Of a stretch of 64,000 bases of DNA, positions 10,232-45,333 are shown in pieces. The translations under genes and the position numbers were made by a program. The stretch spans positions 102,238,001-102,302,000 of the forward strand of contig OZ260663.1 in NCBI GenBank assembly GCA_965285935.1. Reading direction: 5' to 3'. The stretch comes from Ophelia neglecta. Lineage: Eukaryota. The stretch's first letter is position 1. Every line of letters starts with the position of its first letter. Below the pieces are notes generated by a model that saw nothing but the letters and a program-made list of their open reading frames with translations, had not been told where the DNA came from and made no database searches.

Positions 10232-10234
10232 TTA

Positions 10235-10442: not shown

Positions 10443-10450
10443 TGGTGACA

Positions 10451-11306: not shown

Positions 11307-11315
11307 CCTGGTATT

Positions 11316-22999: not shown

Positions 23000-25900
23000 C
23001 TTATTCTACCCCAAACTATTGCGGTGAGTTTACGTTGTCCAGGAGAAGCTCGAGTTCGATATCTTCAAGCACTGGGAGACTGTCGAGTTAGTTATTAACG
23101 AAGTCTCTGCCATTATTTTGGAAGAGAGCAACAGCGATTTTCAGTTCAACATTATCGACGATGGCGTCCCAATGAAGGCTACGTATGCCTCTGATGTGTA
23201 GCGGCTCGTCAGATATATCGTGCCGTCACAGAATGTACACGAAGGGTCGGTCCTGGCTCGTGATGCTATAATCCCTTAGCCTGCAAATAATTGAGCAGGA
23301 AGGGATGGAAACCGTGCCGAGGCTGTCCATATCCTGCCCGGCTGTCGCTGATCTTAGAATATGTTCTCATTCAAATATAGAGACTCATCGGCGTGTTGGT
23401 CCGACTCAAAGCTTCTAGGTCGTTTCACTCTATCAGAGCTCGCGGTATGACAAGTATTGACTGTCCGATCGGGTGAAACCCTAGGCCACTGAGTGAGATG
23501 GTTCTTCCTTTAAGGCCATAGCAGGCCTCTTGCACTCTCTCGCAAGGGTTGTTGGCGCTGTTCAGGAGTATGCCTACGAGACTGTCCTCGCTGGAGATTT
23601 CGAGCGTTGTGCAATTCAATGTCTATTTCAGAGTTTAGTTTTCTTGCAGAATGCGTGGATTCAATGAACACCATAACTTTAGTTTTTGCCTCATTAATGC
23701 ATATCACCATTTACACGGGTACTCCTCACAGATATTGATCATGGACTGTAGAGCTCTCGGAGTGAATGCTGCCAAGGTTATATTATCGGCTTGTTGAACC
23801 GATCCGCAGTAGTGCGCGCCTTTTGATGCGCCGAGTTTAATGTCTCGTAGGATATCACTTAGTTGGTGGATAGACGCGGGCTCCCAGCACAGAGCCCTGT
23901 CGGCAGGACTGCCGTATGGATATTGCCTCAGAGGTCCGCCCATTTACTATCACGCTCGCAGTCATGTTCCTAAATGAGTCGCGGAGCAGCGTCCGGATAT
24001 TTCCTAGAACCCCAAACTCGTGCTACTTCAAGAATAGGCCGTCGTGCAAGACAGAGTCAAATGCCGTCGCTGCATCCAACAAACATACAAAGAGTTAAGA
24101 AAGGGTATATTTTGCGAATTACAATACTCCTCCCATCTCCCCAAGACTACTTTTTTTATATATATTTGGAAATTCACAGGAAGGAGAGTTATACACCTTT
24201 GGTTTCTCGGTCGTGTGCGTGCTTGCACTTTCGCTTATGGATTGTAAATATATGACCGTGCTTCATGGCTGCTGAGACTATACATTCCATTTTTCAGAGT
24301 AGTGAGAGCCAGAAGTGTTGCCTCGCTTGTGTATTTGATGTGTTGGTATGTTTGTCAGCATCGCCACAGGAACAGCTTTTAAGAGTTTGGACAATATCCG
24401 CCTCTTCTTTAGTGGTAACAAGTTTCTCCGTGATGGGATCTCTTTCAAATTTAGCATTTTCTTCTATTTTGCACTATTTATACTGCTCGCATAATTTTCG
24501 GCCTTCACTAGAGGATATAATTGCACAAGGTGGACAGTCCATGCTTTCATCACCTCCTCGTAGCTCCTCAGATTCTAGTCATTGATTTTTAGCTGACTGT
24601 CCTCAACAGCCTCCAGAACTTAGGCTGGTTCACGTTTGCAGCCTCATCCACTTTAGCATAAAATAGTTGGTTAGTGTTTGTTTGGAATTGTCGCATTTTA
24701 TTCCATAATATTGTTTTGGCGTCCTTGTACTTTGCAAATGAAGCAACTGTCTTCCCCGAGGGCGACCTTCGCTTATCCATTGTTCGCAGAGAATGAACAG
24801 GTTGCGTTGAAGCTCTTTGAGCCCGCCCGACATCCACAATGCGAAGAGATATGGATGGAAATAAAAGGCTGAGACATTTGATATGGCTGCATTTTCCAAG
24901 GAAAACACAATGGCATTATTCAAATCGTCAGTTTCATTTAGGAAAGAGGGAGTTTGTGCATAGTACGGAAGCATGCTGGTCACAGCGGTTTTAAAGTTAA
25001 GTTTGCCTGAATCATCCATTTTCCACCAAGTCAGTCGTCGCGGGGAAATTAATTGATCCGAATGAGTCCGTTATTGCTCCTGAGCCTAGGATACGGTCTA
25101 CGAATGTCTGAGGCCCACCATCGTACAGGTCGAATGTATAACAGGGGCCTACGGTAAGTGCAGGGGTAAACATCATTTCAAGGTCACGGCGGGTGATGGT
25201 TCATTGATGAGACGTTGGCGTGGGGTAAATTTGCATAAATCACAGTTAATATCGCCGGCGATGATTGTTCTATCGTCTTATGACAGTGTTAACAACAAGT
25301 TACTGAACTGTTCAATGCAATCAGCGAACTCAATAGACTCGCGCTCTATGGACGGAGGTTAACGCCTGTGATGACGATGGAAAGTCACCGTGTTAGTTGA
25401 ATACGAACGGCTAGATACCTATCCGATCGCGTGTGTAGAATGTCTACGAGCTGTATGAGGGTTTTCGTCACATGATAGGCACTCCGCCGACACCCATTCT
25501 GCTACTGGCCAGTTGCAGATTGCGGTTATAACATGTAGTGTGGGCTATAAAGTTTATATCGAGTGAGTCCACAAAGGATTTACTGTTTTCAAAAAGGCAG
25601 TGTTGACTGACGGTCAGATTAGATTGCAGCAGTTAGCTTATGTAGTGCGCCGTCCTACAGTCTTACAGTTATATGCAATTAGAATCAGACAATCCATGTT
25701 TAATTCTAATTCTTTTTTGTTTGTGTTCCAAGACTGAATTTATGGTGGTTGAGAAACTTTTTAATGACTTCATTGGGGATGTTTTGGTCAATACCACCGC
25801 TCAAGGCTTTGCTGAAGTTTCTAGGGGGTACCTCGTTAAATAGGTTCGCGTCTACTTCCTCTGATAGGTCCGGTGGCTATTGGGTGACTTTGTTCGAAAC

Positions 25901-27031
25901 CGGTCCCACTCGTGGAAAATTTGTCTGTTTTACGGGTTGGATATTCGAGATAACTTTCTCTTTTTGGTCCAGGGAGCTAAATTGCGCTTGTTTCGCCTGA
26001 TAGGTTATTGCCTGATCCATGACTTGAGTGTTATTCATTGGCGCGTTTAAAATTAGTTTTCTAGGTGGGTATGAAGGAGGGCCAGTTGTCACGTTATTCA
26101 ACTTGGGACTTTGATTTTGGGAGTGTGGTTTCTGATTTCCAATGTAGGAGGAGGGTAAATTGGAAGTAGTGTAGGTCGCTATAGAGTAGCCACCTTTCCG
26201 TTGGCAAAGGTATGTGTCTGATCAAACTACTTGTTAAGGGAACCAAAGTCTCTACAATGAAAGTCTTCTAAAGATCCTATTCTGGAGTTCATAATTTGAA
26301 CTGCAATGGTAAAAAGACCATATATCGGATCCTCTTCGATATGCCTTCCACTGTCATTGGCGTTGTCACTAAAACTTGGTTGTGGATCGTGAGTAGTTTG
26401 AGTTTGATAGATGCCACAAACGTTAATTCGCTGTTTCGTTGACTCGATTTTTTTCTATGGCTATATTAAGTATGGTCTCCATGTCATTTATTCAAACCGA
26501 CAAAGTTTCCGCCGCTACAGTTGCTAGTTCCTGTGTGAGATTAAGAACGAGGCTGCCATTGGTTTAATTAGTTCCTTAAATCCTTTTAGTGTTTCCTGGA
26601 GTTTAGGTGGTTTGGTTTTGTCATGTTCATTAGGTTGATTAATTGCTGGGTGAGCTTTGTGCCGAGATCCGGCCAAGACTCCATTTTCCATCTGGGCAAG
26701 TCGCTGTAGAATCCTGATATTGTCAGTGTAGATAGCGCAGAGGTCGTCTACGTTATGTTCCTTGCCTAATATTGATGTGATTGCTGCTGTTGCTGTAGTT
26801 GATAGGCTTGGAGGCTGGCTTTTGTTTTGGCAACTAAAGCTCCTCATGCGTGCTTTGCGAGTCTTTTTTATTCAGTTCAAATATAGGGGTTCCTTCCAGT
26901 GCCATACATATACATCATTGACGAGGTATGTGTTGAAATCGGATAAGTCTTTCCTCTTCGTCTCCTATTTTAGAACCCGATCTTGGAGTTCTTCATTAAT
27001 GATATCGGACAGCTGGTTGAACAGTTCTGAC
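23000..27031 (-). mobile_element. Degenerate non-LTR retrotransposon (RTE-X-like), copy A
   Basis: RT remnant GSVQQADNITL..LQSMINICEEY..KW, APE-like remnants near 25100-25700, ORF1-like remnants near 25800-27000, C-terminal CxxC. Interrupted at 27032 by a Gypsy LTR. The clade call is tentative. Confidence 0.7.
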
Positions 27032-27270
27032 TGTAATGATGATTGATAGTCCATTGGCAGGTAACAGTAGGGTTTATTTTCATGTAACTCGGATAGGTAC
27101 AAATCACCGGTGGTCACTAGAATGGCTAACGGCTTGCTCTGACACTAGAGCGTCCCCAAGTGACATCCGACACCGTGACGTCACCAGCCCAGGGGAGCAC
27201 AGGGCAAGTATATATACCATAACCTGGTAAGTATTATATGACATCCTCCTTTCCAAGTATTTAAACAAAT
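27032..27270 (-). mobile_element. 3' LTR (27032-27243, 212 bp) plus PPT remnant of the Mag-like Gypsy seen in copy B
   Basis: - strand GGAAAGGAGGA|TGTCATATA...AATAAA...CATTACA, matching 60218-60456. The internal region is absent here. Confidence 0.82.
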
Positions 27271-28210
27271 CTCTTGATAATGTTCCTTGTTTTTCAAATA
27301 TTCAGGTAAACTTTGAAAAATGCTCTTAATTTACCTTATTTTAGGTAAATTCATGACGGTTCAACAAAGATCTCGATTACAAATATCCTTTGCCGGTGCT
27401 AAACAGACTTCATGTAGTTTCATCCAAGCCCAATAACTTTTCGTGAACAAAGTTATTTTTTCTGGTCTATCTGATATGCTAACGAGTGTAATTTTGGAAG
27501 TTTGATTCCCGTTACCATGGTAACCAAGGATATTCCAGCTTGCCACTGTATCTTGAAATGATTCTACCATCGGCTCCAACATGTGTTCCAAATTTCATGA
27601 CTTCTTCACAATGTGCACACTTATGACCACTATCCACTATACTATTATGCAAACGCAAATCAAATAAAGAAAAGTATGGGCCCCGGGCCATTCAAAAACT
27701 CTGCCGTTTCATGCGAAGGTGACATTTACAAAGGTCTATAGCTCTGGAACTAGCAGTCATAAATATGAGGCGAGATAACCCTCAAGAAGCACGAGATATG
27801 GGCTTTTTGATAATCTGATAATATAAATCCTATACCCGTTTTAAAAAAACTTACTAGAATTTTGATAAAGTGAACATGTCAAAATATTGGAAAGTAAAAA
27901 AACGTTGCATCTGTCATTCCGCTGTGGTAACCATAGCAACTGGTATCAACTTTTTTTGGTAAATGTATGCTATTGGTCTACTCTTATTTCCTCACTATAG
28001 AAATTTTCTATAGAGGGCTCCTTTTAAAAATTTTAGCCCAAATTGTAAAATTGTGGTAATTTCACTAATTTGTTTACATTCTAGGTTACCATGGAAACGG
28101 CACATAAATTTTTATTGAAAACAGGCTTAATCTAAAAGCCGAGGTCATAAGCTTTCTAGTGATACTAATTTTAGCCTTATATACCTGGGGTTCATTTTAC
28201 TTGCAAATTT
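27271..28210. repeat. Probable non-autonomous DNA-element fragment
   Basis: Recurrent palindromic motifs GTTACCATGGTAAC, GGTAACCATAGCAAC and GTTACCATGGAAAC; no termini identified. Confidence 0.35.
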
Positions 28211-28913
28211 AGGCCCTCCTCTCCTCGTCTTCTAGAGGTTTTACGTCGCAATGGGTGCGAAATTGATTGGAGGCCTCCCACGTTTGGTTATGAGAGGAAT
28301 GTCCAAACGACTTCACGAGGGTTTGCAGTGTAAAATAATGGCCTTCTTAGGAAAGTGGCATCCTGCCAGGAACAATTTCTCACACGACTAAAACATTCGT
28401 TTTCTGTTGATTCTGCTCAAACCCGCCAGGCTGTGACAGAGGAAATTGAGAGATCCGATAGAGACGACTGGAAACAACATTAAGAGATTGAAATTATTTA
28501 TCTTATTGTGTCACTTTTTGGACCATGTGGCATATACATATTATGTGTTGGGGGGAAGGGGGGGGGGGGGGGGTCAGTGTGGTATATAGCTACTGGGAGA
28601 GGGGGCCTAACGGCTCGGAAGACGAGAAGGGGAGGCTAACCGGGTAAAAGGTGGACGTTCAGGAGTTTCCGTTTTTGATAAATGCGCACTGAAACCCAAT
28701 TATTCGGAAGTATATGCACAGCAATAAACGTCCAGTTGGGCGAGTTTGGTGTTGACCATCTCCCCCTTCATGTACATCCCACCTCCCCCTTTCCCTCCCC
28801 CTAGACCTTCTCCCCACTCTCTCACAACCACTCTAATCCTTTACCTTCACTTGTCCACATCCCACCATACAATTTATGACGCCTACGCAATCTTGGGACA
28901 AGGGACCCAAAGC

Positions 28914-29012
28914 ATACAACTCCCTTGATTGGATAAAGAGACCCATGCCTACAACTCTAATGATTTGATAAAGAGACCCCTGTCTACAACTCATATGATT
29001 GGATAAGAGGCC
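28914..29012 (+). repeat. About 35-bp minisatellite, roughly 3 units
   Basis: TACAACTC..TGATT(G/T)GATAAAGAGACCC repeated. Confidence 0.7.
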
Positions 29013-29934
29013 CCCTCTCCACAGATCCGGATATCCGAACCCCCCCCCCCCCCGTTACTTTGCTCTCATGTTCATATATTCTGAATATCTGTATTCTGTT
29101 AATCACAACTTTAATATTACTGAGGAATACTAGTAAAATGATAATTTCGAAAAGGTTGACCGGGTTAATTAGATTAAATAGGGGAGATACATGTTTGCCA
29201 AGTTCTGGCCGTGGCATTGCGGGGAAACTTCCATTTCAGGGGTCTCAGATGATTAAAGTGAAGGATTTGTCTTGGAAGCACACATTTAAAATGAAGAGAT
29301 TTGGTCAGGGGAGTATATTGGATATTTTATTTGAACATGAAAGGAATATATATTTTTTTTTTATTGAGGCCAGCTGGATTCTCTCCCCTACAGCTTACCC
29401 CATCTCCCCTCTCCCCCTCTCGAATGTAACAAATAACCATTCCGAAACATCATGAAAAAAGAACAAGTTATTGTTTTTATCACTGAAATGGGTAACAAAC
29501 CATTGCCCTTTTATTTGTGAAAGGACATATAAACACACGCAACTGCCCGAACAAAATCTCCCTTGTCTCCCTCCCTCGATCAATTGCCCCAGCCCCTTCA
29601 GCCATTAATATTGACCGTATGGAATCGACTAGGTGTATTGTACTTTAATATAGCAGCATGTAAATAATAACCTGCATTGAAAAAATCAGTTACAACTGAC
29701 TGATTTGCTTATGTGTGGTCTGGCTATGTGTTGTCATGGCAAAGTCTCATGACAACACTTGACCAATCGCCCTTTCTAATTTCGATCAATGGCACATGAT
29801 AGCATTGAAGATGATTGATATACTGTGCTATCAAAACTTTTGTTGTTTCACACTAATCTTCGTTTCTTGGTTTTACTTGTCTAATTTTGACAAATAAAGT
29901 TAATGTCGCTAATAGATTATTATGTATTTTACAG

Positions 29935-30018
29935 TCTGGGATGGAACAACATAACCGATGCCGGGGCTTATACATTGTCCTCGGCCCTGAGGACGAACTC
30001 CTCTCTGAAGTCACTGGA
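29935..30018 (+). CDS. 84-bp RI-type (NLRC3-like) LRR exon: (x)LGWNNITDAGAYTLSSALRTNSSLKSL(D)
   Basis: TATTTTACAG acceptor, GA|GTGAGT donor, exactly 28 codons, phase 2-2. Matches LxxNxIxDxGAxxLxxALxxNxxLxxL and splices in frame to 41671 (GA+T = Asp). Confidence 0.9.
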
Positions 30019-31339
30019 GTGAGTACCACCATGTTTACTGTATTCACGTAGAATCAAATGTAAAATAATAAGCATGTTTATTATTTCCTACCACCTCTTG
30101 GAAACATTAAACCTCTTACTGGAAATCGTTAATAACCGTTATCTCTTAGCTTAAGAGAAAGATACCATCAGTCCCGAGTTAGTTACTTTAAGACAACAAA
30201 CGTGATGCAAATATCTAGGTACATCCTGGCCTATATTAACAACCGTGTCCGCCCGGGTAGTTTGCGGTCGCACCCATCTAACATACTCATCAGTCCACTC
30301 ATTCTCTTCATATAAGACAATTTGTTAGCCCTCAGCACAATGGAAAAGTCTTGAATCAGCGACATAGCATATAGTGTTCCCTCGAGTTAAGGCATATATA
30401 GTAATAAGGCCGTCGTGTTTTAAGGGCTATTTTGAGATATTAATAAAAAGAAAGAGGCTTCCATTTGTATTGTAATAATAGGAATGCGCGTTTTTTATTC
30501 TTAATTCTGATTGGCTTATAATACAGATGTACATACAAAAACGGTGACTTGACATCAAGTGTTCCTAACTTACGGTGAACACTGTGGCAGTAGTCCTGTG
30601 CGCTGCAAGCAGTTAATGAATATCACAACGGAAACACTGATAGCAATCATGGCCCTAGTGCTTTCCTGGCATGCTTCAATTATATCAGAATCTCCTCTAA
30701 GATGAAGCACCAGTGACCCCACTGCATATACTACTACCGCCGAACCCTGGATTTAGAATATAGCCGCCATTTTAAATTGTTTACAGCGGACAGCTGCAAT
30801 AATAACCGGGGAGCTAGAGAGAATGGCTCCGATTTTGTTTAGGGTGGTTTTTCATACATTTCTGTTCATAAAAATGCTCGATTTCCCAAGAACTTTGTCA
30901 GAGGGAAAGCGACGTCCGAACATTTTTCTACAAAATATCCTAAATCCAGCCATACCCATAAGGCGCCCGAGCTCTGGTTGTACTAGTCAGGAAGTTGATG
31001 ATGGTCTCTATCTTCGCTTCCATCCCTATCATTTCCCCCAATCAAACCACATGAATGGGAAAAAACTACTTTTGTTGGATAAAACTCGATTTAATAAGAT
31101 CAGGTGTTAGAAAAGATTAAAATGCATGAATATGACATTTACATGTATTTTCGTCACGAAAGACATCATCTACAAAGGTTTCACAATTGTTCAAATAACG
31201 AGTAGTATTATGAAGATACCTCTTGAGTTTTAGCAGGACCATTTGCATTCCAACTGCATCGCTTTATATTGGTAAAAAGCATCATGGGTAACCTGGAGGA
31301 CTTGCCGAAAACCTTTCGGTGCGCCGAAAAAGTAAATAA

Positions 31340-32401
31340 TGGTATATAATTATTATAATAATGAAGAATAAAAAGCAAATTTGATCAAAGTACAATAGAG
31401 AACATATATGTGATTATAATGGAAGATGAATGCGATGAAATATGAACCATAAAAGAAAAAGGATGAGTCAATGAGAGTCCACCAAATAAAGCAATCGGCT
31501 ATTGCAAGGTGTACGTGAGACAAAAAAAGACTACATAAGAACAATATTACAGGTCATTAGTGGGACAATGATAGTCCACTACATAAAACAATACAATATT
31601 ACAAACGATAAGGGAGATCACATAGAAACTTTAGATTATCAGCTTTTTGTTGTGGAAATATAAATACAATCATAGCAATTAAGAATATAACATGTTTCAT
31701 CATGCGAGTCTATGAAGTAATTTTTGCGTAATTCGTGAAACCATAGAAGCTATGAGTGGAACTTTATCTAATATAATATTGGGTGTATGATACAGAAACT
31801 CCACGATACTATGCCTGAGCGATTTGCTGGCAAATGTGTGTCTACATCGAGGGGGGGGGGGGGGTAGAATCTTCAAGAATGTCTAGTAGGGTATGAATGT
31901 ATTTCAGATTGGGGTTGCAATGTATAAGAGGTAAAGAAAGATGGTAGTGAATTGTTTGCAAATTTATAGTAGAATTTAAGAAGATTGAGTTTATGTAGAT
32001 CTCGAATTTTCAATAAGGCATTGGTTTAAAGATTGGTTCCGAATGTGCAATATAACTGCTGCCTGTAGCAATACGAATAATATTTTTCTGCAGCTTTTTT
32101 CATCTACCAGTGTTGCGTCCCCATAGCGCAAAATTCCGCAAGTTAAATAAGGAATGACTAACGTGTTATATAAGGTTATTAGTATATTTTGAGGAATGAT
32201 CTTTTTAAATCTGTTTATAATGCCAATTGGCTTTGATAGTTTATTCGAAATTTTATTGATGTGTGCATTCCAGCTTAAATGTCCGTCAATGCATATTCCA
32301 AGAAAATCAAACTCAAGTACCACTTCTATAGGAGTACCGTCAATAACAAGTATTGGGTTTAAAATATTTTTCTGTGGAGAGTGAAATACCATGGCTTTCA
32401 C
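31340..32401 (-). mobile_element. 5'-truncated CR1-like LINE fragment
   Basis: ORF 31991-32401 FLGICIDGHLSWNAHINKISNKLSK..LYNTLVIPYL is a typical CR1 ORF2 C-terminus; AT-rich tail near 31345. Confidence 0.85.
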
Positions 32402-32459
32402 ATCTACTGTGCGTGTGCAGCTTAAATGCCAGATCAGCGAAAAATAAAACTGTTTCTCT

Positions 32460-33095
32460 ATCAGACCACATTCTTACCAATGACAAATATGAGCAACCAC
32501 TGAAACTTGACTAGGCTCAGATATAGACAAAGTCATACTCGGCGAATTAGTGCCTGAAATTTTTTAAATTAAACATGCGCACCACCAAAATGGACAATTC
32601 GGGGAGAACATCAACAATTTTGAGGAGATGTCAACATACCTTGAGCCACTGGAGGATATAAATCCATAGGTGATAATGTTTGAGGAACACAATTTCAACT
32701 TGAGGACGAGGATGCTACAGACTTTGACTCACAAATGATGCTATCACTGTAAGGCCACACAGCCCCTGGTGCACTAATGAGTTTCACTGTAAGTCCCCAT
32801 AACCCCCTGGTAAACAGATGAGCTTCACCGTACGAAGCGTGAATGTAGAAAATGTTAAATGGCTTGAAGGGAATTCAAAAATTGAAGTGGACATTTAGAA
32901 CTATAAACGTGTATGTGAAAAGGTCAAAAGCCTACTTAATAAAACTAAGCAGGCCTATATTATTAACAATTCCCGTACAGGGAAATAAGGAAAAATATTC
33001 AAGATAGCGAAACGTATCACTGGTTCCAAAGGTGAAGTTATACTCCCTAATTATTGTTCAGCTGTTGAATTCGCTAATCATTTAAGTGATTTGTG
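32460..33095 (+). mobile_element. Highly degenerate L2-like LINE remnant
   Basis: Remnant KIAKRITGSKGEVILPNYCSAVEFANHLSD resembles the L2 ORF2 linker (compare YPLHNSSKTLANGFIEF at 34400). Confidence 0.45.
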
Positions 33096-33429
33096 TCTAG
33101 TGGGTGCGGGTCTTTCGGTTGCCAGTGAGCATGTTGTTCATTACATTGGGTATTGGTTTATGTTTGGTTTGAGAATTGTTGATGTTATTGTTTGATTGAA
33201 GCTATCTTTAATTATCTTCATTACATATGTATGGATGTTTGTTGGCAGGCAGTTAGATCATAATTAAGGTACACTTTTTGCTTTTGCTTTTGCTTGGGTT
33301 ATTATTACTACTTTTGTCGAGTTGTTGTATTTTTTGTCTTTTTACACAGTAAGAGAATATGTCTGTATTCGGCGTTATTGTTTGCATTTGTGCACATCTA
33401 CTTTGGGTTAAATAAAACTATGATGATGA

Positions 33430-33844
33430 TACACAGATATACTTGTGTTGAGGTCAAGGTTGGATTTTCTTGCTTCTCCTTGACACCAAATCAGCAGTGT
33501 ATTTCCGATGTACAGGGTTGGATGGAAGCTTACATATTGAAATTGAATGAAGAAAAAAGCAGAAAGTTTCCTCTTTTCATCAGAACAAAAGAAAAGCCAA
33601 ATTGAAATGTCTTTTTCAATTTAGGAGCCAAATAATACTTCCCTCACTTGTGAAAATCCTTGGTAACAACAAGAAAACACATGGAAACACAGTTGTAGGC
33701 ACTAGTAAAATAATGTCATTATCAATTTTGGATAATCAGACATATTAGGTGCTTTCTGACCGAGGATGCCTGTAAAACAATCGACCAGGTGTTGGTGTTG
33801 AGCCGGTTGGATTATGTTAACCTGCCTTTAACAGGCATAACTCA
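33430..33844 (+). mobile_element. Old L2 ORF2 C-terminal fragment (continues at 36296-36370)
   Basis: CISDVQGWM..LKLNEEK and IRCFLTEDACKT..LVLSRLDYVN; resumes after the nested L2 as PALKQLYWLPISRRVDYKVL. Confidence 0.7.
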
Positions 33845-36287
33845 TCAAGACTTTGTCAGTGACATAATGGTACGTGATCTTATGATTGCAGATCATGCGG
33901 CAATTGAATTGTCTTTGGACTTGTTAAAACCACCTCCTGTCAGGAAAAATATAACTTTTAGGAAATTTAAGTCTGTGGATATATGTGATTTCAGGGCTGA
34001 TATAAAGGCCAGTTCGCTCCCTTCAGCACCACCAGGTGTGCTGGTGTTGGATGGTGCATCAGATTTGGCAGGGGAATATGATCAAGTTATCAAGACTGTG
34101 GTGAACAAACATGCACCTGAACAAAGCAAGTCCATTAAAATCAGGCCAATTTCACCCTGGTATAATGAGTCTATCTCGGATGCTAAACGGACTAGGCGGC
34201 AACTTGAGCGGAAATTTCGCAAGACATGTCTATCAGTTCATCGTGAGATGTACGAGACTCAAACGCAGGTAGTACTATCCCTGATTGACAAGGTAAAATG
34301 TCAATATTATCAAGGTGAAATTTTGAATAGTCCCGGGGACCAAAGGGCCATATTTAGGGTAGTGAGCCAGTTGTTCAGTAAAAGAAAAGATCCAGTTTAT
34401 CCGCTCCATAACTCATCTAAGACACTGGCTAATGGTTTCATTGAGTTCATCGATGGTAAAATCTGCAAGATTAGGTCAGAACTTTCTAAGGTGAGAGACA
34501 ACTCCCCACCGACTGGCGGGGGCCATTTCACCGGTCAACAGCTGATGTCATTTGAGCCTGCCACAATAGAAGAGGTAGGGTCCATTTTGAAAAGTGCTGG
34601 TAATAAGTCTTGTGAACTGGATCCATTACCCATTTGGTTATTACGAGAGTAACTTGATGAACTACTTCCAACCATTACAGGCATTGTAAATGAGTCGCTC
34701 CTATCAGGAAGTTTCCCTCAACATTTCAAGTCTGCCTTGGTAAGGCCTCTACTGAAGAAGTCTACACTTTGTAAAGAACAGTTAAAAAATTACCGTCCAG
34801 TGTCAAACCTTGCATTCATTTCCAAGGTGGTAGAGAAGGTAATTTCTGTCAGGCTGAATAAACACCTATCAGAGAATGGCCTTGAAGAGACCTTTCAGTC
34901 TTCCTACAGAAAGGCTCACAGTGTAGAAACTGCACTTCTTCGCGTTCAAGATGACCTGCTTGGCGCCTTGGACCGGGAGGGTGGTGCTTTACTGGTACTC
35001 CTTGACCTATCAGCGGCCTTCGATACGGTCGATCACAGTCTGCTTCTGGACCGTCTGGCCACCACAGTAAGAGTTGGGGGAACAGCCCTCAAGTGGTTTT
35101 CTTCCTATTTGAGTGATCGGCCACAGTCAGTGGTTGTAAACGGAGAGGCTTCTGAATCTCAACCACTTGCATGTGGTGTCCCGCAAGGAAGTGTGCTTGG
35201 ACCACTACTGTTTTCCATATATACCATGGACATTGGTCAGGTCATGAGGCAGCAGGATATGCTTTCATCTCTACGCCGATGACACACAGTTGTATGGTTC
35301 ATTTGCTCCTAAACAACAGGATGGTCTAGTCAAATCTTTAACTAGACTAGAGCAATGCATTTGTGATATCCGCCATGGATGGCAAGAAACCGTCTTCGTC
35401 TGAATGATGATAAAACTACGTTTCTCATACTCACTAGTCCCTGGGCCCGATTCAGCCCAGAGGCCGAACATGCCATTCGTATCGGCGATACAATGGTCAA
35501 GGCTGTTGAATCTGCAAGAAACATCGGCATGGTGTTTCAGTCTGATGGTCAACTGATCAAACAGATAGCTGGCACCTGCAAATCAGCTTTTCACTATCTC
35601 CGTAACATTGGCAGGATAAAAAGACATCTGACTCCTACGGCTCTAAAAACGGTCATGCATGCCTTTGTGACATCCAAGCTGGATCAGTGCAACTCCCAGT
35701 ATCTTGGGCTTCCAGACAAATATATAGATAGGCTGCAGAGGGTCCAGAATGCAGCAGCTAGGATGCTTCCCGGGTCTGGATACATATGTAAGATGACTCC
35801 TGTTCTCCGTGAATTACACTGGCTGCCTGTTCAGTACAGAATTAATTTCAAGGTCTGCCTTCTTGTGTTTAAGGCCCTGAATGGTTTAGCAACAGAATAT
35901 ATATCTGACTTGATCAAACCATACAAGTCTCAGAGAAACTTAAGGTCTAATGACAATTTACTTCTGGTCATTCCAAGATCAAGAACAGTAACATATGTTG
36001 CTCGGAGGTTTTCCACTGGTGTTCCCAAACTATGGAATTCCCTCCCAATTAATATAAAATCTAGTCCATCGGTCACAGTGTTTAAATCTAGGCTTAAGAC
36101 CCACCATTTTAAATGTGCATTTGACTAGTTCATTTGAACTATTGTTAAATTTTAAGTCGTATTTATTGTCAGACTATTTTTATATTTGCGCGTGATTAAC
36201 CTTTTTTTTATCCCTTGTTGTGTTGTAAAGCGCTTTGAGCTGACATGTAGAAGCGCTATAAAAATGCTACGAATAATAATAATAATA
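33845..36287 (+). mobile_element. Younger 5'-truncated L2 LINE (ORF2 pseudogene)
   Basis: [51 protein letters not shown] and LHWLPV; one stop (34650) and one frameshift (near 35260). L2 3' motif TGTAAAGCGCTTTGAG..AAGCGCTATA with (AAT)n tail; TSD ATAACTCA. Confidence 0.93.
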
Positions 36288-37367
36288 ATAACTCAGTCAC
36301 GCATCCAGCGCTGAAGCAGCTTTATTGGTTACCAATAAGCAGGCGTGTAGACTACAAGGTACTTTAAATGACATGCAAAGTGCTGAATAGCTTGGCACCA
36401 TTGTACATTGCCGACCTATTGCAGGTATTTTATGATTATGAATAATGCTTTTAACTAGTTCAGTGCCAGCACACTGCTTTCTTATAGTGGTGTAAGCACA
36501 TGTACATATTCCTTCACTAACAAAGAAGGAATAGGATTTTATGAAGAATGACCTTTATAAAGCCTCAACGTACACCTTGAATCAGTGCGCTTGGACCTGT
36601 TGGTCATTTGTCCAGAGAGTGACAATACGCCCTCTAACGATACAGATTGAGAAGCACCGGTATCTCTTTATATCCACAGAGGCCGTTGGTTTTACTTAAT
36701 ACCTGATGTGAAACAAATCTTTGAGAATAGATAGGCTTAAAGTTCTCATTAATAATAACATCAGAATTAATCAGTTTGCCCATCTACAGTAGCTAATGCA
36801 AGGACTAGACACACAGACACTCTGGAAAAAACTGAGAAAACAAATGCAATAGGGGAAACCTTCCTTTCTTCCGCTCTCTGCCGCTCAAAGCACACTGAAC
36901 TATGATGGCATACCATTTTACAGTATGCACAGGCAGGTTTATACTTGGGCCTAGAAGTGATGACTTTTGGGCATTCATATCCGTATTACACCTCGAGAGT
37001 CTATGTTATCTATCTGTCGCTCCCGGGCCCTGGCCAACTATACCACTGTCTCTAGTTCCCTATTTATTGCTCCCATCCCACCGAACAAATCTATAGCCGA
37101 TTAAAATAGAGCTCCTATATTAATACCCTGTTATAAGGATTTGCCATTTATTATATTTTCATTTCTTTATTTCGCCTCCTCGTGGGAGAGAGTACATCAC
37201 GTAGTATTATAACATACCCGGTGTACACTAAAATCCTGACGAAAGTATGCATGATAATTCTGGATTACGATAAATACAATGACTCAATACGCTTAACTAT
37301 TTGGGCCTATGCAATATCACTAGTGTTTGAGTGGCTAAACATTTACACCAAATATAGTGACATATAA

Positions 37368-37590
37368 GGGGCCGACCATTTGATAATATAGGGGGGGGGG
37401 GGGGGGGTTCAAAACATTTTTTTTCATAATTCCCCTGCAAATATTTTTTCTTCGGTAAGTTCATTCATCATTTTCTCACTTTTTTTTTTCTCAAGTAGTG
37501 TGACAAACATTCTTTTTGGCCAGAGCTGGCCAACAAACTTTTTTTTTCTAAATTTTTCTCCCCCCCTCCTACATTATCAAATGGTCGGAC
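37368..37590. mobile_element. MITE (PIF/Harbinger-like)
   Basis: TIR CCGACCATTTGATAAT / ATTATCAAATGGTCGG with G and C tracts inside; flanked by TAA on both sides; right tip imperfect. Confidence 0.65.
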
Positions 37591-40500
37591 TAAAAGCCAC
37601 TCGGGCGGTAATTAATGAGTTTGGCCCTAGTCGTCATTATGTTGTGAACAATAATGGCGACGTCTGGGTCCCCGCAGGTAAGTATGTCAATACAAACTCC
37701 ATACGCCGTATCCAGTGCTAGTGATTGTGCGAACGCCGCTACTAGTGGCGATTGCTGAGGGGTGAGAACCGGACACATTAAGAGGAGATGCTGGAGGGTA
37801 GGTTGTCCCTTGCATATGCAGCATGATGTCTCTGTGGGCCCGAATCCCTCTCCACAGATCACTCGGACCATTGTTTTGCATGGCTTTAGTATGCGGGGGT
37901 GCCTTTCTGCCGTGCTCCACCAAATGTTTAGTTTACTGCCATCTACTGCGTCTCTGAGAATGGCGAGCTTTGGGTACATGATAATGCGTAGTTTCCAGCT
38001 GTTACATTGTAGATATCTAACAACGTGTTTCACCCTTTTTTTCCAAAGTTCCTTTGTGGGATATTGACCAGTCACTATCATATCTCTAAAGTCCCCGTCC
38101 AGGCCGTATCTGACTGCGGTTTCAAACATAATACTGATGGGACTCCTATGGTTGTTGGCACCATTCTCCAGTATATTTGACATGACTCGGGGGGCTATCT
38201 TCTTATATGTTGTCAGTTGGGAGGGCAATAAGATCCCTGAGAAGAATCAGTCGTCTTTTGTCTACATACATTTCAGGCCGTACAATAACGACGGAATGAC
38301 AATTGTCCAGTATAAGTGAGATGCGGCTGTGGGTAGAAGTCCGCCCCGACTGCAATGGCCAAGACCCCACATTGCATTACACTTCTTTATGGCCTTGTCT
38401 AAACGAGCTTCGACCGCCTCCTTAAGCTTCCTAAAGTCTGTTATTATGGGCACGTCCATGCGCGTTGCTTGTGTCACTTTTTTTATTTGAGAAAATCCGA
38501 GGCGGATATCACCATAGTATTCTGTTTTTGTTCCAAATGTCAATATTTTGCATTTCGAAGCATTAAACTGAAAGCGCCATTTCTTTGAATAATTATTTGC
38601 GAAGTCACACATTTTCTGAATGTTTCTTCGAAAGAGGGCGACAATTGTGACGTCGTCGGCAAAACTAGGGCACCCAACTAGTGTATCGTACACGTGACAC
38701 ACCAGACTCCTCCGGGAGATTCAAAAGATCCGCGAAGTTCAACATGAATAATGGCATTGACATTACGCCCCCTTGGTGCATTTATTCCCTTTGAGAAGCC
38801 TGCATGGGGGAGTGAGTCCCATGCGAGTTTATACATAGAACTTACAACTTCTCCTATCACACTGTCAACATCCACCATATCTTGTCTCTCACCACCTAAA
38901 TATTGACGTCTTATTTCTCTCAATATGTCTTGCATTGGTACAGTGTATTGTTGTTTGGTATCACGAGTGTCTAGTCTTTTCCATGCAATCCTGCTTTTAT
39001 ATCGACCACTGATCTCTGGTTTTAAGCCTTCGATTCTAACCTCTGTTTTGATAGGTAGGTGGTCAGAGGGGTTCAAAGGGTCTTCGATCACATGACACTA
39101 TGCGCTCCTCTAGGATCGCTGATATCGCTACATGGTCAATGTATGATCTGCCTTGGTGGTGACCGCTAGTTCACTCCTGTCCCACATGTCATGTCCACCA
39201 ACACAATACCAAGTTCTCGAGCCATTTTTATCAGCTTACGGCCATTTCTAGTGCCCGTTCCCATACCTCTATTGCCACACGTCCCCACATCTGCATTCAT
39301 GTCCCCAGCTATAAACACTTGGCCTTTGTCTTGTAAGTCTGTTATAAGCTCATACATTTCGCAGAGGCTGTTGTCAAATGATGCTATCCTACAGTCCGTT
39401 TGGGGTAAGTATACACAGACTATATAAATGTTGAGACCTGTTTCTGTAGTGATTTGGATGCAGCACATCCGGTCGTTTTTGTATTTCCCTTTCAGTGTTA
39501 TATCGAATACTCCTGATAAGGACTTTTGCCAGGGGATGGTGACGCCACCGTGACCAATCACACTCCCACAATCGCCATCAGATAATCTTGCACTAGAAAC
39601 AGCTGTAGAGGAAATTGGCATTTATCTCACCAAGCTTATTATGTTCGCATGGATAAAGAAAATATTCTAATAAGCATATTATATCACATTTTTCCATTCA
39701 CTTACAACAACAAAATTTTGAGCCCATAAGCCCGTTCACATTCCGTTCTCACACTCTGAGATTTGCCACAGGATCGTTAGCAGAAATGTTATTATATAAT
39801 TACGATTGTTCATTTTACCTTTACTAGTTTGCCTCGTATTAGACATAGCTATGATAAAACAGATAGTAGTGAGAACAAGGGCTGGGGTAATAAATTTAGT
39901 ATTTGTATTAGCCACTAAAATGTACTTGGTTTGTGTCATGGCGTGACCAGCTATCTTCATACTCGGTATCATAAACATGTCCCCAGTCATCAGTTTCCCC
40001 GTCGTGTCGTTTATATCTCCAACCATACGCATGCTGGCGTAGGTTTCGATTTATCTCCTGCTCGTGTGTTTTCTCTTCTTTGGTTAGCCACACTCTACAT
40101 GTTATGTCCTCAGGCCAGAAGGCCTCATGAAGCAGCTTCTCAACGTCGGATTCAAGGGCATTGATTTTGCAGCCTAACCTTAGCTCCGAGTACCAGTTTT
40201 TTTATTGTTCACCTGCTTAGTAGAACCGCCTTGCCTTTGCCCATTGTTTTATTTCGTTTTCTATGTCACCAGGGATTAGTAGGGTATACTCTCCCCTCGG
40301 AACTGCATGGAGGTTCACCTTTGGGTTGCCCATGATCTGCTTTAATTGACCTGTCCTTGCTGGTCGTTGCAGGACCGATCAGAGGTGACCACCTTTATGG
40401 TACCTGTATCTGCTGTTTCTGTTGTTGTCCTGCTGAAGTCAATCTCAGGTGAGGGGCCGGCCTGGGTGGTCAGTGGCACATCGATTGAACTGGCCGTGTT

Positions 40501-41212
40501 GTTCTCACCTGGGCCGTTTCTAGATGTGGTACCAGACATCTGTTGTACGGGAAATTTGCTTTTTTCCCTATTGTACACTTCTTTCCAACTTTCGTAATTG
40601 GTTGATATCTCACTAACCATTGCCTCCAGATTTAAGATTTTCTGTTCTAGGCTAACTTTGATTTCATTAGATAATTTCACTAAGTTTCTTTCACGTTCGG
40701 CTCCGATAGCTATTACTTCATTTAATCTTATCACAATAGAGAGTTGCTTGACAGACACATTACCTTCATCAGTGCTGTTCTGAACATTTCCGTTAGTTTG
40801 GTTAACTCCAGTCTTAGAGGCAATGGCTAGATTTCCTCCTCCTCCAAATAATTTGTATGGGAAGGAAGGTCTCAGTCCTTCAATATATGTGTAACACTCA
40901 TATATGTCATCCCCTCGTGATGTTTCTTTGTCCTTTCCAGTTCTCCTGCACAACACTAGGTTCGGCACTAGGTCCGCATCAACGCCGTTAGCTATACTCC
41001 ATTGTGAAAATTGGCTTACTGCATAGTTTGCCAATATTTCTCTTGATTCCTTTATGACCTTTTCTGCTATGTCCTCGAGAATAGTTTCGACAAATTCTCC
41101 TTTTGGTTTAACATCAGCCTGTAGAAGAATGTGTCTCAGACCATCGTCTATTTCATGTAGATAGAGGATATTAAGGGTGACCTGAGATTCAAATGCTGCG
41201 CTGGTCGCAGTC
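37590..41212 (-). mobile_element. Degenerate non-LTR retrotransposon (RTE-X-like): ORF1, APE endonuclease, partial RT and CCHC
   Basis: APE motifs GHGGV, VYLPQ, AGDMNA and SDHLP; RT SFADDV..YSKKWRFQFNASK; C-terminal CCICK..HLLLMC. Internal deletion near 38700. The clade call is tentative. Confidence 0.8.
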
Positions 41213-41221
41213 TTATATCAA

Positions 41222-41315
41222 CCATCGCAGTAATGAGCTTTAGTTATAAAGCGTCATGACGTCGATGTGTTGTTTCAAATGATTACCAGTCTTATATATG
41301 ACTTATAAAACTGGA
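41222..41315 (+). pseudogene. Decayed LRR pseudo-exon (copy B)
   Basis: Homolog of 22-115; ends CTT ATA AAA CTG GA|GTAAG. Confidence 0.45.
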
Positions 41316-41670
41316 GTAAGAACCTTACAGCTTCGTATGTCTATTTAGCTGTACTGCCTCCTGATAATTTAGCTGAATGCCATTATGGCGATGCTCCAAT
41401 ATAAGAAATATATCACAAAGATTCCAGGCGGGAACAATTCGAGACATTACTTTTGTCAGTGAAGTACCCAGTTTAAAAGTTATAAAATCTATCAGCGCAC
41501 TACACAACTAAATATAAATTTCGGCAAACCTCAAGCCTAAGCAGCGTTATATTATACTTCGGCTTTGCTAGCGACGGGCGACAGCAACACTCGGTAGAAA
41601 CCTTTTCCAACAAGTTCTAATTATATATGTTAAAAGATAGCTTACTCTAAGTTACTTTCTTTTTTTACAG

Positions 41671-41749
41671 TTTGTCACTAAAAGACCTGTCAGGTGCTTT
41701 GAAAAGAAAAATGAAGAAGGAGTTCGACGATCGGATCACATTCTTGTAA
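41671..41749 (+). CDS. Terminal coding exon of the LRR gene, copy B: (D)LSLKDLSGALKRKMKKEFDDRITFL*
   Basis: TTTTTTACAG acceptor, phase 2, open to TAA; ungapped alignment to 471-549. Confidence 0.65.
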
Positions 41750-42189
41750 CTCGCTTCAAACCACGTATAAATGTAGAGCTTAGACTGTACACATGATGTT
41801 TGTGATATGAAAGGTATATTCTATACTTTGAATAAAACAATTCAGCTTGTGTCTGTGACGATATAAACCCTAGGCTGCTGACACTCTCATATGTGTCTCT
41901 GAGAGTAGATACCATTTATAATTCATTTCAGTCTGTATACACTAAAGTCACTTTTTACAAGCCACGTATATACATACTGAGCTGAGGCTTTTACAAACGT
42001 TCTGATGAGGTACGAGGAATGTAAATACTAAAGTCACTTTTTACAAGCCACGTATATATATTTACTGAGATGAGGCTTTAGAAATGTTGTCATAAGATAT
42101 AAGCAATAAACATTGTACATTGAATGCTTCATTCCACTCTGTGTCTGGGAGATCTGGTTCATAGTTATATTTGGCCTGAATTTGTTCTG

Positions 42190-43765
42190 GTTATGAAAAT
42201 ATATCGTCTAGTATTAAGGCGACCAGTGATGCTTACAATGATGTATTGTATTAGCTTTTAAATGTATCACTTGAACAGGGAGGTTTTCATGATTAATAAA
42301 AGATTGTAAGGGTCATTCCTCTTTATTAAAGCGACAATGAAATGATTCTTAGTAATTACAGGCCTGTTCCCATTCTGTCTGTATTCTCTAAAGTACTGGA
42401 GAAGCTAATTTACACAAGACTTAGGGAATATATATATTTAATCATGAAAGAGTATATTATCCATAATTTGTCTTCAATAACACTTCAATAAGGATTTTGA
42501 TACTGTGAATCATAAGGTTCTTCTCGATAAGCTGTGTAAATATGTTAGACGAGGTGCAGCATTAAGTAAGTGTCAGAGCTAATTATCTTATTGACAGCCA
42601 TATATTAAATCATCAAAAGTTGGTTTTTAATTGTGAAGTGCCACAGAGGTTACAACTAGGAACGCTGTTATTTTATTATATATTAACGACATCACCAATG
42701 CCTCAATTTTGTTTTTTCCACCTTTTTTGCTGGTGATACTTATGCTTTTATTGATGGCAAATAGTATTCAGCTGATACAAACAATGAATGAAGAACAAGC
42801 CAAGTTACTGGTGAGGTTTCATGCAAATAAGCGTTTTATGTTACGAAAACAAACTTTATCATTATTGTTATGCGTAGGAAGGAACATGTGTTAGTTATTA
42901 ATGTGGTTTTTGCAAGCATATCTCTCGACAAGTTTAGTAACATTTTAGACATCATCATCAGAGATAAAAAACTAAAATAGGGTATAGGTGTTTTGTATTA
43001 AGCTACAAAAACGCTTATATATATCGACTCTTGTAACCTTATATTAATCTTTCATTTATCCATACATATACTATTGTATTGAAGTTTAGTGCGCCGCGTG
43101 TCCCTATCTTCTGTTGCCAAATTTCCCTAATGCAAAAACAGGTTGTGAAAATTCTATATTCTTCTTCATAATATTATCACCTTGTTTTAGTAACTTAACG
43201 TACAACAAGTTAAAAAGAATAAAACTTCTATTCGATGGCCATACTTATGTTTAGATTAAACATCAGCAACAACCCAAGATTTTCAATGATTTTTTACTAG
43301 AAATAAGGACATTCACATGTATACTAATACAAGGCAGGCCTCGCAAGTCAATGTCCCTATGTCGAAAACGTCGGCATTTTCAAAATCAGTAAAATTTAAA
43401 GGTGTAATGCTAAGGAATTTATTGTCATTTAGAGTTGAATGTTTTTGTTGTATTTCAAATTATGAGAATAATATAAAGACCTATCTTTGATCAGATGCCA
43501 TTTCACTGCTTCCCCCTCTATGGACAATTGTTTAATGAAGCTAAATCACTAGGCCTATTTGTTTAAATTTTGTTTTAAATAATACTAATTGAATGTATTT
43601 TTGTACCATCTGTACTGCTTTGCACACACTAATGTATGCTATTATTGTACCTAATATGTGAACTCATCATCCTGCCTTAGAGTCCAGTGCCCTTTGCTTC
43701 TGCTATTTCACGTATATTGCCTGGACCTTTAATATGTATATATGTACAAATCAGGAATAAATAAA
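42190..43765 (+). mobile_element. Degenerate CR1-like LINE (copy B of 720-2180, longer at the 5' end)
   Basis: Same RT remnants plus an upstream KIVRVIPL..NYRP region. Confidence 0.75.
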
Positions 43766-45063: not shown

Positions 45064-45333
45064 CCTTGCGTTCAATAAACGCAAACGTTGGCCTATCCCA
45101 GTTTCCGATACAGATCTCTTTATTGAACGAATCGCGAACGTTTGCTACTAGGCCCCGCCCACAAGATAACAGAACATGTGCACACCCATCCGCCCTTTTG
45201 GTTTTCTTGGCGCACCACCTTCAAATACGTTTGCGATTGGTTGCGAACGTTTTCGGCAAACGAACCATTCAGTTACGGAATTTCGCGAAACGTTTGTGAT
45301 GTTTGCGAACGTTTTCGTTTATTGAACGCAAGG
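45064..45333. mobile_element. 270-bp MITE with CTG (CWG) TSD, PIF/Harbinger-like; copy B only
   Basis: TIR CCTTGCGTTCAATAAACG / CGTTTATTGAACGCAAGG; CTG duplicated at 45061-45063 and 45334-45336; empty site CACACCTGGTATT at 11303; internal GCGAACGTTT repeats. Confidence 0.88.

What the first reader, a model, noticed from the sequence alone, without database searches (positions are those of the whole stretch)
27271..41749. Orphan 3' LRR cassette: a duplicated [LRR exon + terminal exon] with no 5' gene, possibly alternative receptor ends
Seen: between terminal exon A (471) and terminal exon B (41671) the only intact host exon I found is one 84-bp phase-2 LRR exon. There is no NACHT or death-domain ORF and no obvious first exon. 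Homology between the copies breaks at 27270 inside a Gypsy element, as expected for a tandem-duplication junction whose unit starts in an intron. Established: symmetric phase-2 84-bp LRR exons can be skipped or swapped without a frameshift. Inference: an upstream NLR-like gene could splice to cassette A or cassette B and make receptors with different C-terminal LRRs, which would be a duplication-built isoform diversification system. The intact splice sites and non-synonymous divergence of B argue against simple decay.
Basis: inference. Interest (0 to 1): 0.78.

Follow-up and report, generated by a model that had tools for sequence, protein, structure and literature searches.

The report
Truncated immune-receptor gene end beside a paralogue
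The "orphan cassette" is real, but it is the leftover last two exons of a second NLR immune-receptor gene from a different subfamily. It sits just downstream of a neighbouring NLR gene in a fast-rearranging gene cluster, and nothing available shows that it is used as an alternative receptor end.

Summary
The three exons and the homology break at 27270/27271 are confirmed. "No 5' gene" holds only for cassette B.

- **Gene A.** Terminal exon A (471-549) ends an NLR gene body lying upstream of the window. That body has a repeat-module exon and three 84-bp LRR exons. It is colinear with the intact neighbour D until it meets a 100-N assembly gap.
- **Cassette B.** LRR exon 29935-30018 and terminal exon 41671-41749 are not a copy of A's end. 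They are 95-100% identical to the 3' ends of another subfamily ("X") at five or more loci, whose NACHT exons lie about 46-49 kb upstream. A's matching parts are only 63% (amino acid) and 79-85% (nucleotide) alike.
- **Flanks.** Only the distal 3' flanks of A and B are sister copies (96-99%).
- **Junction.** It is unique in the genome. It fuses a truncated gypsy element to a truncated arm of a transposon that had inserted in B's penultimate intron.

Best reading: B is a young, 5'-truncated gene relic in a birth-and-death NLR cluster. Intact splice sites prove nothing at about 1% divergence.

One oddity remains. B's last exon carries six private substitutions, about ten times the rate in its flanks.

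No RNA data were available, so alternative 3'-end use is untested and I rate it unlikely. The scan had already called these ends "orphan gene ends from different subfamilies" (s1-739865).

The parts
471..549 (+). Terminal exon A, the last exon of upstream NLR gene A (Y subfamily). AATAAA lies at 720.
   Evidence: The upstream LRR exons of the same gene are shown.
714..27031 (+). 3' flank of gene A. The proximal part is shared family-wide. The distal block (about 12473-27031) is a sister copy of B's 46043-60217. The flank carries an A-only gypsy insertion at 2634-10441.
27032..27270 (-). Truncated gypsy copy: a 212-bp LTR plus 27 bp of interior. This is the left side of the unique junction.
27271..28230 (.). 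One arm of a long-inverted-repeat transposon. It is truncated at 27269-27271, where other copies run 105-290 bp further. Its true terminus is at 28230. This is the right side of the junction.
28229..29934 (+). Remnant of the penultimate intron of an X-subfamily NLR gene, 96-99% identical to paralogues. It includes a B-only piece at 29193-29558 and a short satellite-like stretch at 28894-29016.
29935..30018 (+). Last 84-bp RI-type LRR exon of cassette B. Its protein is identical to those of the X93, X100 and C5:102.89 Mb paralogues.
30019..41670 (+). Last intron of cassette B. It holds a LINE fragment at 33114-36277 (+), shared in position with the X paralogues and gene A, and a decayed LINE on the minus strand at about 37590-39621.
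41671..41749 (+). Terminal exon B. It is an open X-type exon with six lineage-private substitutions.
41750..46700 (+). X-type 3' UTR region (to about 42414), followed by the proximal flank that is 94-98% alike in all cluster paralogues.
46701..60217 (+). Distal flank block. Its last part (57500-60217) occurs only three times in the genome: B, A (99%) and C5:102.87 Mb (95%).
60218..64000 (-). Full gypsy element of copy B. It runs to 64925, beyond the window. Its LTRs are 209/212 identical.

Best explanation
Cassette B (28229-41749 with its 3' flank) is what remains of the 3' end of a second, X-subfamily NACHT-LRR gene. That gene stood downstream of the Y-subfamily gene A in a tandem NLR cluster.

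Proposed order of events:
1. A transposon with long inverted arms inserted in B's penultimate intron.
2. A non-homologous rearrangement followed, most simply a deletion. Its left break was 27 bp inside the gypsy element of A's flank and its right break was inside that transposon.
3. This removed B's NACHT exon, module exons and upstream LRR exon or exons.

The last LRR exon and the terminal exon were left without promoter or start codon. They still look perfect because the whole history lies within about 1% divergence.

Shown: the structure, the subfamily assignment, the unique junction and the lack of 5' exons. Inferred: deletion as the mechanism, and present non-function.
For: - B's LRR exon with 50 bp of flank on each side is 184/184 identical to the X100 copy and 183/184 to X93.
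- B 28229-34649 is colinear with X93 at 96-98.5%, including the LINE. B 38446-43766 is about 95% identical to X93 and X100.
- The X paralogues have NACHT exons 46-49 kb upstream of their terminal exons, and so do at least eight other family members.
- For B, no NACHT, module or further LRR exon exists between A's terminal exon and 29935, nor anywhere from -90 kb to +109 kb apart from gene A's and gene D's own.
- In X93 and X100 the intron continues upstream of the 28229-equivalent at 97% mutual identity, and X100 has its penultimate LRR exon about 460-520 bp further up. In B that sequence is replaced by the transposon arm.
- The arm has a true terminus at 28230 but is cut at 27269-27271 relative to four other copies.
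- The 100-bp junction occurs once in the genome. Its two halves occur separately many times and overlap by 2 bp.
- All the ages are about equal: B-private non-coding 0.6-0.8%, transposon-arm private 0.95%, LTR pair 1.4%, and A/B flank near the junction 1.2% pairwise.
Against: - B has no disabling mutation, although none is expected at this age.
- B's terminal exon carries 6 private substitutions in 79 bp, against 9 in 1322 flanking bp (Poisson P = 2e-5; Fisher P = 6e-4 against five sister paralogues). Five of the six change the amino acid. Pure neutral decay cannot give that excess. It needs selection while the exon was still translated, micro-conversion from an unsampled donor, or a mutation cluster.
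- Gene A lies upstream in the same orientation with frame-compatible exons, so read-through splicing is physically possible.
- No RNA data were available.
- The deletion itself is inferred, and no undeleted haplotype was seen.
Confidence: 0.62

Rival explanations
1. Transcripts of upstream gene A sometimes skip terminal exon A and its poly(A) site. They splice from A's last LRR exon to 29935 and then to 41671. This would make a receptor with a Y-type body and an X-type C-terminal LRR cap, used as an alternative last-exon system.
For: - Gene A's exons lie upstream on the same strand.
- All LRR exons are 84 bp and share one phase, so any join keeps the frame. This is a known property of NLR LRR exons (PMC6642158).
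- B's exons and splice sites are intact, and AATAAA follows exon B.
- The excess of private amino-acid changes in exon B suggests it was translated recently.
Against: - There is no transcript evidence of any kind.
- Terminal exon A has a strong acceptor and an AATAAA 171 bp after its stop. Transcription would then have to run through 29 kb carrying 20 sense-strand AATAAA and two retroelements.
- The layout is unique. Paralogues show one terminal exon per NACHT exon, and no further cassettes follow B.
- B's intactness is expected by youth alone.
- B has Asp where nearly all other copies found keep Gly in KEFGDR. The only other Asp rows are two 2-mismatch matches on C1, which may be chance.
- Gene A's own NACHT exon is unseen behind an assembly gap.
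Confidence: 0.1
2. Origin by a non-homologous tandem duplication of the unit 27271-60456, so that B was an orphan from birth. Gene conversion or crossing-over with Y-type paralogues then rewrote the left copy. Under this model too, B has no function of its own.
For: - The junction has the form end-of-unit | start-of-unit (27270 matches 60456), with 2-bp microhomology.
- The distal flanks are true sister copies at 96-99% and occur only three times in the genome.
- The cluster is visibly mosaic. The proximal flank and the LINE are 94-98% alike between subfamilies whose exon-proximal DNA is 78-88% alike.
Against: - The left copy should hold the rest of the transposon and X-type sequence upstream of -5140. 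Instead -33.6 kb to -3.8 kb is colinear with Y-type gene D at 90-95%, and no trace of the transposon is present.
- A's LINE is less like B's (96.5%) than X93's and X100's are (98.5%).
- Several long conversion tracts would be needed.
Confidence: 0.15
3. Assembly artefact. A and B are alternative haplotypes, or the contig is chimeric at the repeat-rich join 27270/27271.
For: - The join lies between two multi-copy elements.
- In the only three public runs (one sample; Logan contigs of DNA) no listed contig bridges the join.
- B-form letters replace A-form letters at 26938 and 26968 in all three runs. Paralogue letters replace B's at 12 of 24 B-private sites.
- Only 30-34% of B's 31-mers are held by those runs.
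Against: - There is no N anywhere in the window. The only gap within -90..+144 kb is at -33.7 kb.
- The repeats at the join total only 1.2 kb, which long reads span easily.
- A and B differ by large indels and by subfamily, not as alleles would.
- B has 24 private sites against every paralogue over 4.2 kb, so it is a separate copy.
- Logan contigs drop minor variants, so absence there means little.
Confidence: 0.07

Closest known systems
Truncated paralogue fragments (unprocessed partial pseudogenes) in birth-and-death NLR clusters, as discussed for the zebrafish NLR-C family and for plant NLRs (PMC11192531)
   Same: - A large tandem family, with at least 247 NACHT candidates in this genome.
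- Unequal recombination, transposon-rich surroundings, copy gain and loss, and patchy sequence exchange.
- A copy that lacks its 5' exons next to intact paralogues.
   Different: - This is an invertebrate family with a NACHT exon, 62-residue junction-module exons, single 84-bp LRR exons and a 24-26-codon hypervariable last exon.
- The relic is so young that it has no disabling change.
- Its last exon carries an excess of private replacements.
Exon-modular LRR domains of vertebrate NLRs, with alternative splicing of LRR exons (NLRP3 exon 5 skipping; Hoss et al. 2019, PMC6642158)
   Same: RI-type LRRs are encoded by short, strictly frame-preserving exons. Exon skipping or swapping would therefore keep the reading frame.
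   Different: - The known cases skip internal exons within one gene.
- Here the proposal is a switch to a second terminal cassette 29-41 kb downstream that comes from another gene. No transcript supports it.
Donor cassettes for gene conversion (lamprey VLR flanking LRR cassettes, chicken pseudo-V genes). This comparison rests on my own knowledge and was not tested here.
   Same: Incomplete LRR-coding pieces lying beside a receptor gene, in a family whose copies show mosaic similarity.
   Different: - There is no array of cassettes, only one.
- There is no evidence of somatic assembly.
- The mosaicism here is germ-line and evolutionary.

Membership tests
NACHT-LRR (NLR) gene | A NACHT NTPase exon belonging to the same transcription unit | tested here: not met
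   For cassette B, tblastn with neighbour D's 585-aa NACHT exon (Pfam NACHT E = 1e-25) finds only D itself in -90..+144 kb. Paralogues have theirs 46-49 kb upstream of the terminal exon. For gene A, colinearity with D stops at the 100-N gap, so this is undecidable.
NACHT-LRR (NLR) gene | RI-type 28-residue LRR encoded by a frame-preserving exon with splice sites | tested here: met
   29935-30018 is 84 bp with AG/GT. It scores 55.9 bits against a family LRR-exon HMM and matches Pfam LRR_6 at E = 0.0017, below the cutoff as expected for a single split repeat.
Simple tandem duplication of the unit 27271-60456 | The left copy contains a homologue of the whole unit at similar identity | tested here: not met
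   - Only 32398-36277 and 41213-60456 have counterparts in A.
- 27271-32397 and 36278-41212 have none in register.
- Gene-proximal parts are 69-89% alike, against 96-99% in the distal flank.
Simple tandem duplication of the unit 27271-60456 | A unique end-to-start junction | tested here: met
   The 100-bp junction query is found once in the genome. Its halves are found separately in gypsy copies and transposon copies.
Alternative last-exon system | Upstream donor exons on the same strand, compatible phase, and a poly(A) signal of its own | tested here: met
   Gene A's exons A1-A3 are on the + strand, and all exons are 84 bp in the same phase. AATAAA lies at 720 and at 41831.
Alternative last-exon system | Transcripts that join the common exons to each alternative end | not testable with these tools
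   No RNA run holds the stretch, and the three runs found are DNA contigs.
Alternative last-exon system | The arrangement recurs in paralogues, as a designed feature would | tested here: not met
   34 last-exon copies were found. They pair one-to-one with NACHT exons wherever both were scored. No extra cassette lies between B and gene D.
5'-truncated duplicate (partial pseudogene) | Lacks 5' exons and promoter while being near-identical to the 3' part of intact paralogues | tested here: met
5'-truncated duplicate (partial pseudogene) | Signs of relaxed constraint, such as stops, frameshifts or lost splice sites | tested here: not met
   - Both exons are open with AG/GT.
- About 0.5 neutral changes per exon are expected on B's branch, so this carries no weight.
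- The Gly-to-Asp change at a residue kept by nearly all other copies found is a weak hint.

The most novel reading that the evidence does not exclude
Gene A reads through its own end and splices onto the stranded X-type cassette. A rearrangement would then have created, in one step, a receptor that can swap its hypervariable C-terminal LRR cap between two subfamilies. The tenfold excess of private amino-acid changes in orphan exon B would be the trace of ongoing selection on that second end.
Probability: 0.08. Interest if true: 0.6.

Novelty: new member of a known kind. Interest (0 to 1): 0.3.

Why it matters
As it stands, this is a well-resolved example of how a large invertebrate NLR cluster turns over. 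The steps seen are a transposon insertion in an intron, a non-homologous break that strands a gene end, flanks that stay homogeneous while exon-proximal DNA stays subfamily-specific, and a last exon that changes much faster than its surroundings.

It would matter more if the stranded end were spliced onto the neighbouring gene. That would show a one-step route from gene loss to isoform diversity in an innate immune receptor. The excess of private changes in exon B makes that test worth one RT-PCR, but it does not make the idea likely.

Tried and rejected
- **RNA evidence.** The look-up of sequencing runs listed no RNA run. The three holders are DNA contigs of one sample and carry only 30-34% of B's words.
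- **Reads on the junction.** Read laying on 26500-32450 gave short Logan contigs. A loose end at 27270 equals B's gypsy continuation. The "other letters" are B's letters on the A side and paralogue letters on the B side. This neither confirms nor refutes the junction, because such contigs drop minor variants.
- **More paralogue DNA.** D's terminal exon, the middle of X93 and X100, and the other roughly 28 last exons could not be read.
- **Full last exons by pattern search.** The donor test for the first three private sites of exon B is therefore missing.
- **A first regular-expression scan for LRR motifs** missed A's and D's exons. tblastn and an HMM replaced it.
- **LTR-driven transcription of B.** Rejected: the gypsy copies are on the minus strand and the two exons have no start context.
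- **Joined exon models.** Frame compatibility was checked only from exon lengths and phases and in a local script.
- **The large protein searches** were not used, because Pfam had already settled the families.
Full report
**Setting.** The window is G000:C5:102238001-102302000 (+) of a 762-Mb invertebrate assembly. It contains no N. I added 90 kb upstream (L027, L026, L025, L011-L016) and 80 kb downstream (L017-L024). Negative coordinates below count leftwards from window base 1.

**Observation**
- The LRR exon 29935-30018 is 84 bp. It sits between ...ttttacag and gtgagt and reads LGWNNITDAGAYTLSSALRTNSSLKSL.
- Terminal exon A (471-549) reads LWRNRLSNGMKSQITKEFGDRVQF*.
- Terminal exon B (41671-41749) reads LSLKDLSGALKRKMKKEFDDRITFL*.
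- Self-comparison shows colinear homology 13-27270 ~ 41213-60456. Identity is 93-99% in most pieces but only 85% over 13-644, the terminal-exon region. Homology ends exactly at 27270/60456.
- That point lies 27 bp inside a gypsy element. In B the element is complete (60218-64925, LTRs 209/212 identical, RT-RNase H-integrase on the minus strand).
- Between the two terminal exons, tblastn, an LRR-exon HMM, the NACHT exon of the neighbouring gene and the family's repeat-module exon find nothing except the one LRR exon. The larger ORFs are gypsy and LINE.

**What lies upstream**
Upstream of the window, on the + strand, lie:
  - a 331-aa open exon made of 62-residue repeat modules (-30838..-29846);
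  - three 84-bp LRR exons with AG/GT: L014:9172-9255, L015:1773-1856 and L016:3144-3227.
- The stretch from -33641 to -3828 is colinear, at about 79-96% by piece (mostly 87-95%), with the intact neighbour D. D has a NACHT exon at L021:5036-6790 (Pfam NACHT E = 1e-25), module exons, and LRR exons at 123543, 130030, 136183 and 140631.
- Terminal exon A is therefore the natural end of a gene, here called "A".
- A's colinearity with D stops 105 bp from a 100-N assembly gap (L013:6254-6353). D's NACHT exon ends about 2.2 kb beyond the corresponding point. No NACHT is seen from there to -90 kb.
- Whether gene A has its NACHT exon cannot be decided.

**What cassette B is**
- B is not a copy of A's end. 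A's last LRR exon is 63% identical in protein, and about 69-78% in DNA, to B's. The terminal-exon regions are 79-85% alike.
- B matches another subfamily, here called "X":
  - 29559-30146 is 98-99% identical to C5:93.435 Mb, 100.690 Mb and 101.973 Mb;
  - the exon with 50 bp of flank on each side is 184/184 identical to the 100.69-Mb copy;
  - 30145-34649 is 98.5% colinear with the 93.43-Mb copy, including the LINE fragment 33114-36277;
  - 39000-42300 is 95% identical to copies at C5:101.94, 102.885, 100.697 and 93.422 Mb and C12:61.72 Mb.
- Those X genes have NACHT exons 46-49 kb upstream of their last exons. So do D and at least eight further paralogues, giving one NACHT per terminal exon.
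- For B, that distance falls inside gene A's last intron.
- B is thus the last two exons of an X-type gene without the rest of the gene.

**How it was stranded**
- In X93 and X100 the intron continues upstream of the point equivalent to 28229. The two are 97% alike there, and X100 has its penultimate LRR exon about 460-520 bp further up.
- In B that sequence is replaced by 27271-28230. This is one arm of a transposon with about 1-kb inverted arms, of which many copies exist at 91-98%.
- The arm's outer terminus at 28230 is the true element end. Its inner side is cut at 27269-27271, whereas four other copies run 105-290 bp further.
- The left side of the join is the truncated gypsy of A's flank.
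- The 100-bp junction is unique in the genome. Its halves occur separately and overlap by two bases.
- So a transposon first inserted in the intron of an X-type gene copy. Then a non-homologous break fused its interior to the gypsy in A's flank.
- A deletion of the intervening DNA, including B's 5' exons, is the simplest event.
- A non-homologous tandem duplication of 27271-60456 gives the same junction. But it predicts X-type sequence and the rest of the transposon upstream of A's copy. Instead the Y-type, D-like gene body is there.

**The flanks**
- From about 42415 to 46700 all cluster paralogues, X and Y alike, are 94-98% identical. A/B similarity there says nothing specific.
- The distal block is different. 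The stretch 57500-60217 exists only three times: B, A (99%) and C5:102.87 Mb (95%).
- A's and B's distal flanks, with the same gypsy at the same site, are real and recent sister copies.
- The cluster is thus mosaic. Flanks and the intronic LINE are homogeneous, while exon-proximal DNA is subfamily-specific. That pattern fits repeated unequal crossing-over and conversion, as proposed for other large NLR families (PMC11192531).
- All datable events fall within about 1% divergence:
  - B-private non-coding changes, 0.6-0.8%;
  - private changes of the transposon arm, 0.95%;
  - the LTR pair, 1.4%;
  - the A/B flank next to the junction, 1.2% pairwise.

**Does intactness or divergence argue for function?**
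- Intactness does not. With about 0.7% change on B's branch, roughly half a substitution is expected per exon, and the LRR exon is identical to its paralogues.
Against five X-type sisters, exon B has 6 private substitutions in 79 bp, while 1322 flanking bp have 9 (Poisson P = 2e-5). The five sisters together have 3 exon and 69 non-coding private changes (Fisher P = 6e-4).
- Five of the six change the amino acid. Three lie in the otherwise conserved tail. One is Gly to Asp at a position where nearly all other copies found keep Gly; the only other Asp rows are two 2-mismatch matches on C1 that may be chance.
- Neutral decay cannot produce this excess. The possible causes are:
  - selection while the exon was still part of a translated gene, before or after the break;
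  - micro-conversion from a donor not in my sample;
  - a mutation cluster.
- I could not collect the other last exons to look for a donor.

**Alternative 3' ends**
- The idea is physically possible. Gene A is upstream on the same strand, every LRR exon is 84 bp in one phase, and NLR LRR exons are known to be strictly frame-preserving (PMC6642158).
- Against it:
  - Terminal exon A has a good acceptor and an AATAAA 171 bp after its stop.
  - 29 kb with 20 sense AATAAA and two retroelements follow before B's LRR exon.
  - The layout occurs once in the family.
  - There is no transcript evidence, because no RNA run exists for this organism in the index.

**Assembly**
- The three public runs that hold the region are DNA contigs from one sample.
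- They show B's continuation at 27270. They show B's letters on the A side (26728-26968). They show paralogue letters at 12 of 24 B-private sites.
- Such contigs drop minor variants, so this neither confirms nor refutes the join.
- Three things make an artefact unlikely, though not excluded: the lack of any N in the window, the small size (1.2 kb) of the repeats at the join, and B's 24 private sites.

**Verdict**
- This is a real, well-defined, young gene relic in a birth-and-death immune-receptor cluster.
The duplication model is wrong, and the isoform hypothesis is untested and improbable (about 0.1).
- The same window's last exons had already been described by the scan as orphan gene ends from different subfamilies (s1-739865). 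My analysis agrees for B and corrects it for A, which has its gene body upstream.

Noticed in passing
window 41671-41749: Terminal exon B carries 6 lineage-private substitutions (5 change the amino acid) in 79 bp, against 9 in 1322 flanking bp. Five sister paralogues have 0-1 each. This is about a tenfold excess over the local neutral rate in an exon that now has no gene.
   Followed up: partly
L013:6254-6353 (window -33746..-33647): A 100-N assembly gap sits exactly where gene A's colinearity with intact neighbour D ends, about 2 kb short of the expected NACHT exon. Gene A also lacks D's four single-module exons (D 114.3-118.6 kb).
   Followed up: partly
L013:9162-L014:154 and L022:6343-7335: Genes A and D each have a 331-aa open exon made of 62-residue tandem modules (186-bp period). 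This is the HD2-to-LRR junction repeat noted elsewhere in this genome.
   Followed up: partly
window 27271-28230; L005-L008: A transposon with inverted arms of about 1 kb or more around a roughly 1-kb centre. Many copies exist at 91-98%, often as facing pairs about 1 kb apart. It was not classified.
   Followed up: partly
window 42415-46700 versus 41213-42414: The 3' flank is 94-98% alike between NLR subfamilies whose last-exon region is only 78-88% alike. The intronic LINE 33114-36277 is likewise shared at 96-98%. This suggests concerted evolution of flanks around subfamily-specific exons.
   Followed up: partly
window 28894-29016: A short satellite-like stretch whose relatives form long arrays with about 35-bp spacing on C2:108.1-109.24 Mb.
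   Followed up: no
L023:6030-6113 and L024:2183-2266: Gene D carries two identical LRR exons 6.15 kb apart, a recent tandem duplication of an exon-plus-intron unit. Gene A has an older copy of such a unit (-14351..-10537) from which the exon is deleted.
   Followed up: partly
L036 (C5:100686240-100691621): In paralogue X100 the intron piece equivalent to 30145-32519 lies upstream of the B-like LRR exon. This means another local exon-unit duplication or permutation.
   Followed up: no
L018-L019 (window 82674-94000): Three tandem copies of a 4.3-kb unit (93-99%) lie in the intergenic region between B's flank and gene D.
   Followed up: no
L014:1727-1777, minus strand (window -28273..-28223): A 17-residue fragment resembling the end of the NACHT exon (IEGLVLNVGGTLDLRDI), in inverted orientation inside gene A's intron.
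   Followed up: no
window 2634-10441: A gypsy insertion present only in copy A, with gag (PNMA/zinc knuckle) and pol (RT, RNase H, integrase) on the minus strand. The scan has already described it as an inside-out copy.
   Followed up: partly
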